A stretch of DNA of 59,099 nt, filler included, from Dugesia japonica (lineage: Eukaryota), in NCBI GenBank assembly GCA_001938525.1. It is 5 parts of 5 records of this genome, joined end to end, with 100 filler letters (N's around TTAATTAATTAA, not from the genome) between each part and the next. Parts side by side here need not be neighbours in the genome. Positions count along the whole stretch, not along the records: positions 23,494 to 38,535 come from MQRL01589337.1; 4 more parts are not named here. One strand, given 5' to 3'. The position numbers and the translations under genes are program-made. How positions within the stretch are numbered: position 1 is the stretch's first letter; each line of letters begins with the position of its first letter. The notes under the pieces are model-generated. The model was given only the letters and a program-made list of their open reading frames with translations, was not told the DNA's origin and searched no databases. Shown piece by piece: positions 23,494 to 38,535 of this stretch.

Positions 23494-25800
23494 CTTTTAT
23501 CTAATTTGGAGTCGTATTCATAGGCATAACATTTTGATTTAATAAAATCGCATTTAGTTATTTCATTGTTTGGTTTTTCATCTTTCATTTGAAATAAATT
23601 ATTTCCAATAAACTTGTTACTTGTTTTAAATTTTCTTGTCCAATTATTTCTATAAATATAGAATCAGTATCTGAGTAATGAATTTTGTATGGGGCCCTTT
23701 GGGATTTATTAGGAATCTTTACATCTAATTGATTATTAATAAAGTCATAAATTACTTCTTTAACATATTCTAAAATAGTAAAACCAATGTAAGGGAATTT
23801 ATTATACTTTAATTTACTCTGTCTTAAATGGATTGCTGCTGTTTCTGCTTCCAAAGGTNGCGAGTGTCCACGAGCTTCTCCTGTTTCTGTACATGTAAAT
23901 ATTTTACTTGATTTAAAATTTATTTTAGAAGTAAATGTTTGACAATCTTTATCAGTTTCAACTATTTCAACATTACATCTTTTTCTGATATCTTCTAATG
24001 TTTTACCATAAAAAGCATTATTTAATAATTTGAAAAAGTAATCTCCAAAAACATCGTTATTTCTTTTTGATTCATTTCTTTGACCAATAGTAAATTGAAT
24101 ATAATCTTTTAACCAACGGTTTGTTGGCATTTTATATTTACTATGAATTGTTTTTATTTTCCTTCTTAAAGATTTGTATAAATCTAATGTACTTCCTAAA
24201 ACAATATAATTTTGTTTATCAAATTGATATTTACTTTTTACATAAATTCCAAGAGATAATGGTTTTTGTTTATTTGTAATTGTACTTGTCCAACTTTCCA
24301 AATCTGCATAAATTACAAAAGGTAATTCATTTGTGTAATAATTATTTTTAAATGAATAATATTTATCAGTTTCATAATAAAAATTTGATGAATAATGATT
24401 TATACATTCTTTTTGATGATCAATTAATAAAGTTTTACTTCTAAATGAATTCATACAACATAACCATAATTCATTTTGATGATTATTAGTATTTGCAAAA
24501 ACGCCAACATTTCTACATAAAATATAATGACCTTTATAAAATAATAAATTAAATTTATTCGGGGCCCCTTCTGAAGCATTTGAATTANNNNNNNNNNNNN
24601 NNNNNNNNNNNNNNNNNNNNNNNNNNNNNNNNNNNNNGATGGGACCCTTTGGGATTTCGTTCATAATGAGAAATGTAAATAGGATAGATTTTTACTTTTG
24701 ATGTTACTTCAAATACATTTACTTTAAAATCATTTAATTTTTCAAATAATTTTACATCATCAATACTAGCTGAAAAATTAATTCCGTTTGTTTTCAATTC
24801 TGGAATAAATTGTTTATAAACACTTGCTTTAGTTTGATGATTTTGAAAAACATGTTTATGAGNTAAAATAAAATATATAAAACCATAATTATCCTTATTT
24901 ACAATATTAATTACACCTGGTTTTGAAAATGATAATTTCTTAAGTTGCACCAGCAATAGATTGATATTTAGAAAGTTCGATTTTAAAATTAACAATACGA
25001 TCCAAATTCCAACCAGATTCATTTTGATCTTCATCTTCCATGAATCTTTGAAGTTGATTTATTAAATTATTTACAATAATTTTTACATCACTTTGAACAG
25101 TGATTGTTTCATTATCAGAATATGAATTAAATATTCTTTCTTTGCCCTCCGTTTGCGTCTTTACAATTTACACTCAATTGCAACATCATTTTCTTTGAAT
25201 AATCAAAATATATATCAACAATTTTAGTAATTTCTTTTTTAAAATAACTCCTGTATTTAAAACATAATTGTTGATTATTATTTCTAGTTAATTCAATTTT
25301 ACTTTCTTTAAAATATTCGATTTTATAATATTTTATATTCTTTAAATGTTTAAATAAATTTCTTGTTTCATTCTTTTCAAAATCAATTACCTCATCACCA
25401 GGTAATTTCATCAAATAATTTTTTAGTTTCATCTTCTTTCAATTTCAAAACACGATCTTTGTGTATTCCACTATTAAAATGTGATTTTGCATGATTATAT
25501 TTACTAAAAATTAAATGGGGCCCGTTGGGATTGCAAATATCACAATATAATGGAAATACACCAATCCCAGACATGCCTCAAATACTTCCACAATTTGTGG
25601 ATTTTTTATGCAATCGCAAGCCTTTTTCTCTTGCTAATCTTTTGAAGCAAATGCTACATGTGAAATAATTGTGTACCGATAAGGCACATGTTTGAGATTG
25701 GATATGCGACGAATACCCTGGGTTTTTTTAAAAGTCTTGTTACAAACAGGACATTTAAAAATTACCGCTAAAGCGCTTTTTCCACTTATTCATTTTATAG
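23494..25800 (-). mobile_element. Polinton/Maverick protein-primed family B DNA polymerase gene, decayed and internally deleted, with upstream C2H2 zinc-finger region
   Basis: VIYADLES (ExoI), FFKLLNNAFYGKTLED (motif B), HYSDTDSIF (motif C), FEKLNDFKVNVF..IYPIYIS and LLFYKGHYILC. Zinc fingers FKCPVC and YCDIC..H..H lie at 25460-25765. Confidence 0.9.
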
Positions 25801-25949: not shown

Positions 25950-27300
25950 CAATGCCGTCCATATGTTTTGGGCCACCCCTATAAAATGATGAAAATATAT
26001 AATTATAAGTACTTTAATTTAGACTATATTTAAAAATATCAAATAATATGTTGAAGTACATGTTTCCAATAAAAAATTTTCAAAGTAAAATTGTTGTAAG
26101 TGTAGAAAAACCGATTTTTCCAAAAACATCAATTTTTAGGTCATTTTGAATACAAGAGTAAAAATTCAATAAAACATCTTTTATTTACATTTCAAATGAG
26201 GNAACACATTATAATAAATAGTCCACCTCATGAACAATCAAGACACTCAAAATTAGTACCTTGTATTCATACCTTTATGTTTAATTACCCCTTGAATCCT
26301 TCTTGGCATGCTTTCATAAAGATTTTTAATTTTAGATGTTGGAATCAACGCCCATTGCTCCTCGGAATTCTTCCACAGTGCCTCAATATTTGCTGGCTTA
26401 CACATAGCAACTTGGGCTTTTAGGTCAGCTCAATTATATTCAGGTCTGATGATTGAGCCGGCCAATCACTGAGTACGCAGATTTTTTTCATGTCCAAAAA
26501 AGAAGACACCAATCGTGATTTATAGCATGGAACTCCGTTACATATGAAGCTCCAGAATATATTTGTTGAAAAATATTCTGTGCCTCATATATTGGCAACA
26601 ACCCTTTCTTCAATACATTCATGTAGACATCAGAATTCACCTGATCCAGACACCTTATCAGAACTCTGGTACCATCTTCTTTGATNNNNNNNNNNNNNNN
26701 NNNNNNNNNNNCTCCGAATTTCACCGTTTTCGTGATATATTTTGGATTATACCTTGATCCTTGAGGTCTGCGGACATATTCCCTTCTTCTAGAAAACAGT
26801 TCTATGCGACTTTCATCAGTAAAAATCACCTCATTCCAAAAAGAAGGAAGCAGTTTGCTATAATCTCTGCACAACTTTAAGCAATTCTTGATATGTCTCT
26901 CATTTAAATATGGGTTTTTCACTGTAATTCGTCTGAACAAGCCATACTTTCTCAGAATGCGCTTCACAGTACTAACTGAGGAAGTTTGACTTAATTTCCA
27001 ATCGATAAAAAGATCACGTGCTGTTTTCTGGGGATTTTTCTATAACATCCGAATAAGTGATCTTTGTGCATTTTTCGGGTAACGACCACTTTTACTTAGG
27101 TTTTCCAATGTTCCATGTTGTTGCAGCTTCCGTACAATATGTTGAATATCATTCTTGAAATATTGAGTTCATTTGAAATGTTCGGCTGAGACAAACCCTC
27201 TTTCAATTTTTTAATGACTAAATTCCTAATATCTATTGATATCTTGGCATATCTTTAACATAAGAATTTCTAAAAGTAAAAAAATATATTACTTAATCAT
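25950..27300 (-). mobile_element. Tc1-family (DD34E) transposon, decayed, one TIR retained
   Basis: TA|CAATGCCGTCCATATG terminus at 25950. Transposase ~26280-27251 has FWNEVIFTDESRI, TVKFG, IFQQ and DWPAQSSDLNIIE, with frameshifts. Confidence 0.9.
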
Positions 27301-28157: not shown

Positions 28158-28223
28158 TTTCTATACTAATAAAATTTTATATTTTTCAAAAACAAAAAAT
28201 TAAAAAACCAAGACGCCAACCCA

Positions 28224-28370
28224 AGTAGACGAGAAATGACCGTTTCCCGTTGGTTTTACAATTTATTTTCACAATTCAAAATTTTATATTGTTATTTTTT
28301 CTAAGTATTAAACATGTAAGTGAAGAAGAAGGGCAGAACCTTACTGGAAAACCGTTATTTCTCGTCTACT
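28224..28370. repeat. 147-bp segment bounded by ~25-bp inverted repeats AGTAGACGAGAAAT...ATTTCTCGTCTACT
   Basis: Direct reverse-complement match. Confidence 0.75.
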
Positions 28371-29019
28371 TCTGTTACATGCTCATTAATCGTGAGAAAA
28401 CGATCCTTTCTTGAAACGATTGGTAACTAGTAGGTGGATCGTTTATACTAATTCAGTGCCAAAAAGTCTTGGTCCTGGAGATATAATCCGCTCAAAGTAA
28501 AATAGAAAGCTGAGACTCATTAGAAAAAGCTTAAAGGTGTCCTGATTTTTGAGCTTCTACTAAGAAAGCAAACAATGTGAAAACACATAGATTTAATCAT
28601 CTGTAAAAGTTATTGGCGTTTGAATTGGATTTACTGCTACAACCACAATACTCACATAACCTTTCACCATCAGATTTCCATTCATTTCACTATCCTCAAA
28701 ACTCCTTGTATGGTGTAATGTTGAAATCAGATGTGGCTATAAATCAACATAAAAACGACAGAAAAGCGCTAGAAGCAATTGAAATGCACTAAACAAGCAG
28801 CAAACCAATTTTTCATTTTATTAAAGCATTAAATCATCAGATATCCAAAATTATATGATTCTTTAGTAAGTATTCAAAATCAAATGATAATTTTAATTTG
28901 GAATCATTTTTATTATTTAATACAATCAATAGTCGATATATTATATTTAATAAAATTTATATTAAACGTTTAACATAAATTGTTGAAAAGTAGTAAAATT
29001 AAAATCTCAACAAAAATTT

Positions 29020-36568: not shown

Positions 36569-36671
36569 GTTTTACTTTTAATATTTAAAAATTATTGAAT
36601 AAATGAAAAAATAATAAATTTAAATGTTAAAATTTAATATTTTAAAAATTAATTTGCTGGGATTTTTTAGA

Positions 36672-38535
36672 ATGATTATTCAAGAACAAAATTCTTCATT
36701 GGATTCTGAAGGAATGGAAGGAAAATATATTGAAAAAAACTGTTTTAAAGGAAAGAAAATTGCAGTTTTAACTAGTGGAGGTGATTCTCAAGGAATGAAT
36801 GCAGCAGTTAGANNNNNNNNNNNNNNNNNNNNNNNNNNNNNNNCAACAATGTATTTTGTTAAAGAAGGCTATCAAGGTTTAGTTGATGGTGGAACTGATA
36901 TTATTGAAGCAACATGGGCTGATGTTTCTAGTATTATACAATTGGTAAGTCTAAAAAATTGATTTCTTTTTACAATAAGTTTAAATAAACAAAAACAAAT
37001 CCAATTATTAATTGATTATTAAAATGAATTTGAATTAATTTATAAAAAAATCTGTAGGGTGGAACGATTATTGGATCAGCCAGATGTATGGATTTCCAGA
37101 CTCGTGAAGGATTTCTAAAAGCAGCCAAAAATCTTGTAGATCGAGAAATTACAAATCTGGTAGTGATTGGCGGAGATGGTTCATTGACTGGAGCTAACAA
37201 CTTTCGTATTCAATGGACATCTTTATTGACAGAACTTTTACTACAAAGTAAATTGAAAATTGTATTTAAAGAAAAAAAAATTTATTAAAATATTAATAAT
37301 CATAGATAAATTAAATGAAAATCAATTAGAAAAATGTGGACATTTNNNNNNNNNNNNNNNNNNNNNNNNNNNNNNNNNNNNNNNNNNNNNNNNNNCAACA
37401 ATGTATTTTGTTAAAGAAGGCTATCAAGGTTTAGTTGATGGTGGAACTGATATTATTGAAGCAACATGGGCTGATGTTTCTAGTATTATACAATTGGTAA
37501 GTCTAAAAAATTGATTTCTNNNNNNNNNNNNNNNNNNNNNNNNNNNNNNNNNNNNNNNNNNNNNNNNNNNNNNNNNNNNNNNNNNNNNNNNNNNNNNNNN
37601 NNNNNNNNNNNNNNNNNNNNNNNNNNNNNNNNNNNNNNNNNNNNNNNNCAGACTCGTGAAGGATTTCTAAAAGCAGCCAAAAATCTTGTAGATCGAGAAA
37701 TTACAAATCTGGTAGTGATTGGCGGAGATGGTTCATTGACTGGAGCTAACAACTTTCGTATTCAATGGACATCTTTATTGANNNNNNNNNNNNNNNNNNN
37801 NNNNNNNNNNNNNNNNNNNNNNNNNNNNNAAAATTTATTAAAATATTAATAATCATAGATAAATTAAATGAAAATCAATTAGAAAAATGTGGACATTTGA
37901 ATATTGTTGGTTTGGTTGGAAGTATCGACAATGATTTCTGTGGAACAGATATGACTATTGGTACTGATAGTGCATTACATAGAATCATTGAAGCATGTGA
38001 TAATCTTACACCAACTGCTCATAGTCATCAAAGATGTTTCATCATCGAAGTAATGGGTCGTAACTGTGGCTATCTTGCATTGATTTCTGCAATAGCTACA
38101 GAAGCTGCTTGGGTATTCATTCCAGAATCTCCCCCAATTGAAGATTGGGAAAATAAATTATGCGATAAACTACAAATTGTATGTCAAATTTATTTCAAAT
38201 GATTTAAATTTATTTTGAAATGAAAATATTTGTAGGACCGAGAAAATGGACAACGATCAAGCATCATTATTGTGTCTGAAGGAGCAATGGATAACAATTG
38301 CAATGCTATTACATCAGATTATGTACATAAAGTGATCACATCCAAATTGAATATCGATACTCGAGTAACAGTTCTAGGTCATGTACAACGTGGAGGACAT
38401 CCATCAGCATTTGATAGAATTCTTAGTACAAGAATGGGAGCTGAAGCTGTTCTTGCATTAGTTGATGCAGAAAATAATAGAAATTTAGCAGCATGTGTGA
38501 TTTCAATAGATGGAAATCAAATTATTCGAGTTCCT
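36672..38535 (+). CDS. pfk: ATP-dependent 6-phosphofructokinase (eukaryotic type), N-terminal half; truncated at scaffold end
   Basis: [67 protein letters not shown] and [16 protein letters not shown] introns, e.g. 36945-37057 and 38179-38235. An internal block is duplicated between gaps. Confidence 0.97.

What the first reader, a model, noticed from the sequence alone, without database searches (positions are those of the whole stretch)
23689..25531. A 15-nt, frame-preserving, GC-rich micro-element inserted three times in Polinton coding sequence
Seen: AT-GGG(G/A)CCC(T/G)TTGGG-AT occurs at 23689-23705, 24639-24655 and 25515-25531 in very AT-rich DNA. Each copy is a 13-nt core plus an AT duplication, exactly 15 nt. 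On the coding (minus) strand it is read in different phases: SQRAP just upstream of the polymerase YSDTDS motif, PKGSH, and PNGPH. It is therefore conserved as DNA, not as protein. Removing the 25515 copy turns YCDICN[PNGPH]LIFSKYNHAKSHFNSGIH into a canonically spaced C2H2 finger (C-x2-C-x3-F-x8-H-x5-H). The core is palindromic or hairpin-forming (GGGCCC; CCC-NTT-GGG). Inference: this is a tiny mobile or recombinogenic element spreading in a DNA-virus-like genome and tolerated because it is 3n and stop-free. It is analogous to yeast mitochondrial GC clusters or Rickettsia palindromic elements. I do not know of this being described for Polintons.
Basis: partly seen in the sequence, partly recalled or inferred. 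Interest (0 to 1): 0.85.

Follow-up and report, generated by a model that had tools for sequence, protein, structure and literature searches.

The report
Repeated 15-base GC-rich insert in polymerase gene
A decayed virus-like DNA polymerase gene in a very AT-rich animal genome holds three near-identical GC-rich 17-base strings: two are clean five-residue insertions and the third probably sits where relatives already encode the same residues, so this looks like one short segment copied inside one gene, not a proven mobile element.

Summary
They are the only ones in 15 kb (0.02 expected by chance). All lie in one strand orientation inside a broken protein-primed polymerase (pPolB) remnant.

- **Copy 1:** the window is longer than all 159 relatives in this loop, most often by 5 residues. 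The nearest relative has a clean 5-residue gap opposite SQRAP.
- **Copy 3:** the zinc-finger Cys-to-His spacing is 17, against 12 in relatives.
- **Copy 2:** it lies one base from the N gap. Its residues match those of the nearest N-terminal relative (NPKG) and a spider protein (NPKEKH), so it is probably ancestral and not an insertion.

The motif's codons (CCC, GCC, TCC) are unused elsewhere in the gene. The hairpin is negligible and there are no inverted ends. Copies 2 and 3 share a reading phase.

Best reading: a 15-base segment was copied into two further AT sites of the same gene lineage by a DNA-level, microhomology-bounded process. A genome-wide micro-element and an assembly artefact remain open. 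The genome-wide count could not be made. I did not fetch relatives' DNA; that step is referred. Interest is moderate.

The parts
23494..25574 (-). Remnant of a protein-primed family-B DNA polymerase (pPolB) gene of a Polinton-like element. It is broken and is cut at its 3' end by the piece's edge.
   Evidence: Its longest open stretch matches relative P0191 at E 8e-49 and 48% identity. P0191 and P0049 pass Pfam PF03175. 2195 representatives match at E<=0.001. tblastn bounds are 23526-25161, and the N-terminal zinc-finger piece extends the gene to 25574.
23689..23705 (+). Motif copy 1 (as written on the + strand). On the coding strand it is read as SQRAP, just before YSDTDS.
   Evidence: There are five extra residues against relatives: the modal excess is +5 in 159 relatives and never 0, and P0191 has a clean 5-residue gap.
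24639..24655 (+). Motif copy 2, read as (N)PKGSH, starting one base from the N gap.
   Evidence: Relatives P0106/P0190 have NPKG and P0057 has NPKEKH at the aligned place, so it is probably the ancestral copy.
25515..25531 (+). Motif copy 3, read as (N)PNGPH inside the N-terminal C2H2-type zinc finger.
   Evidence: The spacing from the second Cys to the first His is 17, against 12 in P0190, P0051 and others. Local alignments place a 4-5 residue gap at the motif-coded residues.
24561..24573 (+). Degenerate motif-like GC island (3 mismatches to the core, contains GGGGCCCC), read as EGAP.
   Evidence: Every GGGNCCC in the piece lies in this gene (0.11 expected).
24588..24637 (.). Assembly gap (N). 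Its length is only estimated. It was not filled.

Best explanation
One short GC-rich DNA segment has been copied within a single pPolB gene lineage.

**Proposed events.** The copy next to the gap (copy 2) most likely lies in ancestral coding sequence for a linker that relatives also encode (N-P/K-K-x-x-H before the NLL..HY block). Copies 1 and 3 are later additions of the same 15 bases at two other A-A-T sites of the same gene, in the same orientation.

**Proposed mechanism.** The copying acted on DNA, not on protein. Its borders coincide with 2-3 nt of identity (AT or AAT). This fits a repair or replication event in which a 3' end primed on the existing copy, copied 15 bases and returned. That would be a templated, microhomology-bounded insertion and not a transposase reaction. 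The unit is 3n and free of stops in all six frames, so the reading frame stayed open.

**Shown.**
- Three near-identical copies.
- Extra residues at two of the sites.
- Codon usage foreign to the gene.
- No inverted ends and no stable hairpin.

**Inferred.**
- The direction of copying (site 2 to sites 1 and 3).
- The repair mechanism.
- That the additions predate the gene's decay.
For: - **Non-random, clustered copies:** three copies and no others. All are in the 2.0 kb gene remnant out of 14.6 kb of read letters; (g/n)^3 = 0.003. All have the same orientation.
- **Copy 1 is extra:** the window is longer than each of 159 relatives between two conserved anchors, with a modal excess of +5, and the nearest relative has a clean 5-residue gap.
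- **Copy 3 is extra:** the zinc-finger spacing is 17 against 12, and the alignment gap falls at the motif residues in P0190, P0051, P0099 and P0100.
- **Copy 2 looks ancestral:** P0190/P0106 read ISHH-NPKG against the window's ISHY..NPKG, and the spider protein P0057 reads NPKEKH. NPK occurs 19 times in 139,056 residues, yet in two independent relatives at this linker.
- **DNA-level origin:** two reading phases are used, and CCC, GCC and TCC occur only inside the GC patches.
- **No transposon anatomy:** the core starts and ends with GGG, and the hairpin is -1 kcal/mol.
- **Frames stayed open:** a 333-codon open stretch that contains copy 1 has a chance probability of 8e-16 at this composition.
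Against: - The donor itself has odd, GC-ending codons. If it were plain ancestral coding sequence, AT-ending codons would be expected, so its own origin is unexplained.
- Templated inserts described for polymerase-theta repair copy sequence immediately beside the break (PMC4490562). Here the copies are 0.87-0.95 kb apart.
- Two independent events with identical borders are unusual for repair.
- Copy 2 touches an assembly gap, and the two gap flanks may come from different copies of the element.
- The relatives are at most 52% identical. No empty DNA site was seen, and the NPKG match is at protein level only.
Confidence: 0.42

Rival explanations
1. A dispersed micro-element. A 13-nt GC-rich core has inserted independently at all three (or four) sites with an AT target duplication. 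It belongs to a family spread through the genome or through the Polinton lineage, and is moved by some enzyme acting in trans.
For: - The borders are discrete and identical in three copies, and each is flanked by AT.
- The codon usage is foreign at all copies, including copy 2.
- A degenerate fourth island sits nearby.
- The linker around the gap is a median of 11 residues longer than in 50 relatives, about two units.
- Yeast mitochondrial GC clusters give a precedent for GC-rich units with 2-3 nt flanking repeats in AT-rich DNA (PMC4478555).
Against: - There is no copy in the other 12.6 kb of transposon-rich host DNA.
- There are no inverted ends and no stable hairpin.
- Thirteen bases are far below what known transposases bind (own knowledge).
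- Relatives carry NPKG or NPKEKH at site 2.
- None of 191 relatives' proteins shows the unit's translations enriched.
Confidence: 0.25
2. An assembly or sequencing artefact. The string would be a synthetic oligonucleotide remnant or a consensus error of a poor draft.
For: - The draft quality is poor: 12 N runs in 15 kb and single Ns.
- A 552-nt block of the PFK gene is assembled twice at 100% identity around gaps.
- Copy 2 is one base from a gap, and the degenerate island is 14 nt from its other side.
- The spacings are oddly similar, at 870 and 876 nt.
Against: - Copies 1 and 3 lie 156 and about 650 nt from the nearest N.
- Their flanks are colinear with relatives to the residue, and the frame stays open. 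An adapter join would not give that.
- The copies differ by point changes.
- None of the six 13-mer strings appears as a primer or adapter in 8.4 million papers; there were 3 unrelated hits.
Confidence: 0.12
3. Excision footprints of a larger cut-and-paste or Helitron-like transposon that entered and left the gene three times, each time leaving terminal bases between duplicated target bases.
For: - The flanks are AT...AT.
- Tc1/mariner-like remnants lie next to the gene.
- The degenerate island GGGGCCCC is a perfect 8-nt palindrome, as expected for two inverted ends.
Against: - The 13-nt core is not palindromic: it has GGG at both ends.
- Three visits to 1.9 kb leaving the same 13 bases are improbable.
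- No element with such ends lies in the piece.
Confidence: 0.05
4. Native protein motifs. The three strings would be ordinary coding sequence that happens to be similar.
For: Site 2 residues are shared with relatives.
Against: - Two reading phases are used.
- Relatives lack the residues at sites 1 and 3.
- The codons are not used elsewhere in the gene.
- The chance expectation is 0.02.
Confidence: 0.02

Closest known systems
Templated insertions of polymerase-theta-mediated end joining, or replication template switching
   Same: A short insert (15 nt) that is a near-exact copy of sequence in the same locus. The borders fall in 2-3 nt of identity. No transposon ends are present.
   Different: Described templates lie immediately beside the break (PMC4490562), whereas here they are about 0.9 kb away. 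The same donor with the same borders was used twice. No accompanying deletion is seen.
GC clusters of yeast mitochondrial genomes (for example GC42)
   Same: GC-rich units in very AT-rich DNA, flanked by 2-3 nt direct repeats, of unknown mechanism (PMC4478555).
   Different: GC clusters are mitochondrial, tens of bases long, mostly intergenic and present in many copies, and they have a constrained hairpin. The unit here is nuclear (it lies next to an intron-bearing PFK gene), 13-15 nt long, inside coding sequence, lacks a stable hairpin, and has three copies in one gene.
Rickettsia palindromic elements (own knowledge: Ogata et al. 2000)
   Same: Selfish-looking repeats inserted in frame into protein-coding genes and tolerated as extra peptide segments.
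   Different: Those elements are bacterial, 100-150 nt long, strongly palindromic and have dozens of dispersed copies.
MITEs (miniature inverted-repeat transposable elements)
   Same: Short, non-coding, and flanked by a short repeat of the target.
   Different: MITEs have terminal inverted repeats, are at least about 50 nt long, and are dispersed through the genome. None of these features is met here.

Membership tests
Protein-primed family-B DNA polymerase (Pfam PF03175, DNA_pol_B_2): the host gene | Significant similarity to proteins that pass the family's curated cut-off | tested here: met
   E 8e-49 and 48% identity to P0191. P0191 (39.6 bits) and P0049 (88.6 bits) pass PF03175, whose cut-off is 25.8 bits.
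Protein-primed family-B DNA polymerase (Pfam PF03175, DNA_pol_B_2): the host gene | The window's own protein pieces match PF03175 | tested here: not met
   No hit at E<=0.01 or at E<=1. The remnant lacks most of the domain.
Protein-primed family-B DNA polymerase (Pfam PF03175, DNA_pol_B_2): the host gene | Polymerase motifs B (..FYGKT..) and C (YSDTDS) | tested here: met
   These are invariant columns in the alignment with 12 relatives.
Protein-primed family-B DNA polymerase (Pfam PF03175, DNA_pol_B_2): the host gene | Complete exonuclease and motif A part | tested here: not met
   395-513 residues of full-length relatives have no counterpart in the window.
Polinton / Maverick element | Retrovirus-type integrase, capsid proteins, packaging ATPase and protease next to pPolB | tested here: inconclusive
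   On the one side that the piece holds, there is no ORF above 75 aa and only Tc1/mariner-like fragments. The other side lies outside the piece.
Polinton / Maverick element | Terminal inverted repeats and a 6-bp target duplication | not testable with these tools
   The element's ends are not identifiable in the piece.
MITE / cut-and-paste transposon | Terminal inverted repeats | tested here: not met
   The core begins and ends with GGG. Only the flanking AT is symmetric.
MITE / cut-and-paste transposon | Target-site duplication shown by an empty site | tested here: inconclusive
   AT lies on both sides in all copies. No relative is close enough to show a DNA-level empty site: the best is 52% protein identity.
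MITE / cut-and-paste transposon | Copies dispersed in unrelated contexts | tested here: not met
   There is none in the other 12.6 kb of the piece. The rest of the genome was not available.
Yeast mitochondrial GC clusters | GC-rich unit in AT-rich DNA with 2-3 nt flanking direct repeats | tested here: met
   definition from PMC4478555.
Yeast mitochondrial GC clusters | Stable, constrained hairpin; tens of bases long; mitochondrial; mostly intergenic | tested here: not met
   The hairpin is -1.0 to -1.2 kcal/mol. The unit is 13-15 nt long and lies in coding sequence. An animal-type PFK gene with introns lies on the same piece.
Rickettsia palindromic elements | In-frame insertion into protein-coding genes | tested here: met
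   This holds for copies 1 and 3.
Rickettsia palindromic elements | 100-150 nt long, strongly palindromic, bacterial genome | tested here: not met
   15 nt long, weak hairpin, animal host. The definition is from own knowledge.
Templated (polymerase-theta-type) insertion | Insert matches a template in the same locus, with microhomology at the junction | tested here: met
   Copies 1 and 3 match copy 2 at 12/13 and 11/13 core bases. AT/AAT lies at the borders.
Templated (polymerase-theta-type) insertion | Template immediately beside the break | tested here: not met
   The copies are 870-950 nt apart; definition from PMC4490562.
Library adapter / contig-junction artefact | Occurs only at contig or read junctions | tested here: not met
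   Only copy 2 abuts a gap. Copies 1 and 3 lie 156 and about 650 nt from any N. Reads were not available.

The most novel reading that the evidence does not exclude
The 13-nt core plus AT would be the smallest insertion element yet seen in an animal nuclear or virus-like genome. It would be a self-propagating GC-rich unit that spreads in frame through the coding sequence of a Polinton-like lineage, with copy 2 being an old insertion shared with relatives and not native sequence.
Probability: 0.18. Interest if true: 0.8.

Novelty: new variant of a known kind. Interest (0 to 1): 0.4.

Why it matters
Suppose the copying is real. Then a defined 15-base segment has been written twice more into a polymerase gene while keeping the frame open. 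That is a rarely documented way for coding sequence of virus-like elements to gain peptide loops. It would also be a possible nuclear counterpart of the GC clusters of AT-rich organelle genomes. A genome-wide count could turn it into a new class of micro-element, or reduce it to a local repair scar. As it stands, the evidence rests on three copies in one decayed gene of a poor draft assembly.

Tried and rejected
- **Pfam on the window's own pieces:** nothing.
- **PDB profile search with the family alignment:** no hit, so I could not place the sites on a solved fold.
- **Word-based search with the N-terminal piece:** no hit.
- **Scan of 188 relatives (191 after three later additions) for the unit's six translations:** no enrichment.
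- **Search for a local template of the second, roughly 42-nt GC-rich patch:** none found in the piece.
- **Literature search for the six 13-mers, and for GC-rich in-frame inserts in Polintons:** nothing relevant.
- **Hairpin idea:** rejected.
- **Tiny-intron idea:** rejected, because the unit has no GT..AG on the coding strand (read from the sequence).
- **Footprint idea:** weighed and ranked low, because the core is not palindromic.
- **Finding's proposal to take a copy out and re-read the finger:** I did not do this. I only counted spacings and aligned the sequences as they stand.
- **PFK exons:** Only one exon-bearing stretch was searched, by reference.

Full report
**1. Observation**

The pattern GGGRCCCKTTGGG occurs three times in the piece, at 23691-23703, 24641-24653 and 25517-25529, all on the + strand. 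Shuffles give 0.02 matches at up to two mismatches. A T follows in all three, so identity runs over 18 nt. No other 17-mer within four mismatches exists in the 15,042-base piece.

A fourth island at 24561-24573 matches the core with three mismatches. Every GGGNCCC in the piece belongs to these four places, against 0.11 expected. The surrounding DNA has 20-26% G+C.

**2. The gap, tested first**

Copy 2 begins one base after the N run 24588-24637. The degenerate island ends 14 nt before it. With 50 N the flanks differ in phase by one base, but the length is only an estimate, so this carries no information.

In 50 relatives, the residues aligned to the last letters before the gap and the first letters after it are adjacent or overlap. 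The window's known letters already exceed the relatives' linker by a median of 11 residues. So the gap need not hide any part of the gene.

The two flanks are not copies of each other. They may still come from different copies of the element. The same assembly holds a 552-nt block of the neighbouring gene twice, at 100% identity, around N runs.

**3. What the motif sits in**

The minus strand encodes a remnant of a protein-primed family-B DNA polymerase.

- Its longest open stretch (333 codons) finds 2195 representatives at E<=0.001.
- It matches P0191 at E 8e-49 and 48% identity.
- P0191 and P0049 pass Pfam PF03175.
- Motifs B and C are invariant columns in the family alignment.

The gene is broken:

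- at least three changes of reading frame outside the gap, some of which may be draft errors;
- one internal loss of roughly 400-500 residues covering the exonuclease-to-motif-A part;
- no stops inside the homologous stretches;
- a 3' end cut by the piece's edge.

It also carries five short in-frame GC-rich additions or islands: the three copies, the degenerate island and one patch of about 42 nt.

No other Polinton gene is in the piece, so 'Polinton' is an inference from the polymerase alone.

The host is an animal. An exon-bearing stretch at the far end of the piece matches human liver phosphofructokinase at E 4.5e-60, better than it matches the yeast enzymes. The DNA is far too AT-rich to be human.

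**4. Are the copies insertions?**

*Copy 1 (SQRAP, just before YSDTDS).* Between two conserved anchors the window is longer than every one of 159 relatives. The excess is +5 in 85 of them, +4 in 41, +6 in 19, and never 0. The nearest relative shows a clean five-residue gap exactly opposite SQRAP.

*Copy 3 (PNGPH).* The N-terminal finger has 17 residues between the second Cys and the first His. P0190, P0051 and the other finger-bearing relatives have 12. Local alignments to P0190, P0051, P0099 and P0100 put a five-residue gap at the motif-coded residues. The P0190 alignment is weak on its own: 62 of 2000 shuffles reach its score.

*Copy 2 (NPKGSH).* This copy is different.
- The closest N-terminal relative (P0106/P0190, from metagenome and Logan contigs) reads ISHH-NPKG at the aligned place.
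- A protein of the spider Stegodyphus mimosarum (P0057) reads NPKEKH.
- NPK occurs 19 times in 139,056 residues of the relatives, yet it occurs in two independent relatives inside this 14-residue linker.

These residues are therefore probably shared by descent, and copy 2 is probably not an insertion.

**5. DNA, not protein**

- The unit is read in two phases; copies 2 and 3 share one.
- Its codons are alien to the gene. Outside the GC patches CCC is used 0 times in 10 Pro codons, GCC 0 in 11 Ala codons and TCC 0 in 21 four-fold Ser codons. GC3 is 0.12 outside and 0.45 inside.
- In the 333-codon stretch, the only two runs that most relatives lack are both GC-rich: 0.78 and 0.51, against 0.23 for the stretch.
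- The unit has no stop in any of the six frames.
- An open run of 333 codons at this composition has a chance probability of 8e-16. So the additions sat in a gene that was under selection or died very recently.

**6. Anatomy of the unit**

There are no terminal inverted repeats: the core has GGG at both ends. GGGCCC is present in two of the three copies. The best DNA hairpin is a 3-bp stem of -1.0 to -1.2 kcal/mol. All copies have the same orientation.

All three lie in the 2.0 kb gene remnant out of 14.6 kb of read letters, for which (g/n)^3 is 0.003. The spacings of 870 and 876 nt between neighbouring islands are oddly similar and unexplained.

**7. Explanation**

The pattern is one site shared with relatives, two sites where relatives lack the residues, the same gene, the same orientation, borders in AT/AAT identity, and no transposon anatomy.

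This fits best with a short segment copied twice within the gene lineage by a templated, microhomology-bounded repair or replication event. Three points count against it:
- the donor's own GC-ending codons are unexplained;
- described templated inserts use templates right beside the break (PMC4490562), whereas here they are about 0.9 kb away;
- identical borders in two events are unusual.

The identical borders, the foreign codons at all copies, the excess length of the linker, and the precedent of yeast mitochondrial GC clusters with AG or ACT flanking repeats (PMC4478555) all speak for it. The NPKG match and the absence of copies outside the gene speak against it.

An artefact is unlikely for copies 1 and 3. 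They lie 156 and about 650 nt from any N, and their flanks are colinear with relatives to the residue.

**8. Limits**

The source genome could not be reached. No relative is closer than 52% protein identity. So neither the genome-wide count nor a DNA-level empty site could be examined.

I did not fetch the DNA of relatives by look-up, and I did not scan collections for the motif. That step is referred.

- While brainstorming I recalled from memory a few short oligonucleotide strings: adapter or linker sequences, transposon ends and telomere-type motifs.
- The notes also hold the coordinates of the 42-nt patch. The report itself gives counts only.

Noticed in passing
inside the pPolB remnant, window 23494-25574: A further in-frame GC-rich patch of about 42 nt (51% G+C), bounded by a 12-nt direct repeat (11 of 12 identical). 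It encodes 14-15 residues that 168 relatives lack; the modal excess is +15. It is unrelated to the motif except for a 7-mer in inverse orientation, and no template for it is in the piece.
   Followed up: partly
window 36624-38535 (+): Exons of an animal-type ATP-dependent 6-phosphofructokinase (E 4.5e-60 to the human liver enzyme). They show that the host is an animal and that the piece is nuclear.
   Followed up: partly
window 36813-37345 and 37365-37898: A block of the PFK gene is present twice at 100% identity, offset by 552-553 nt and interleaved with N runs. This is almost certainly an assembly duplication and a warning about the sequence next to gaps.
   Followed up: yes
window 26488-26967 (-) and 28613-28792 (+): Remnants that look like Tc1/mariner-type transposases. 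The first has a weak HTH_Tnp_Tc3_2 hit (E 0.015). The second was recognised only by eye, from a C-terminal pattern. The polymerase remnant therefore lies in a nest of decayed transposons.
   Followed up: partly
relatives P0042, P0047, P0057, P0130, P0190, P0191: Many relatives carry a recombination endonuclease VII domain (PF02945) just before the polymerase part, and an N-terminal zf-met/jaz-type finger. This architecture is not part of the finding.
   Followed up: no
window 23689, 24559, 24639, 25515: The start-to-start spacings of the four GC islands are 870, 80 (across the gap) and 876 nt. The near-equality of 870 and 876 is unexplained.
   Followed up: no
window 28218-28248 and 28346-28376: A 31-nt inverted repeat, 84% complementary, with arms 97 nt apart in otherwise AT-rich DNA. 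It may be a small foldback element.
   Followed up: no
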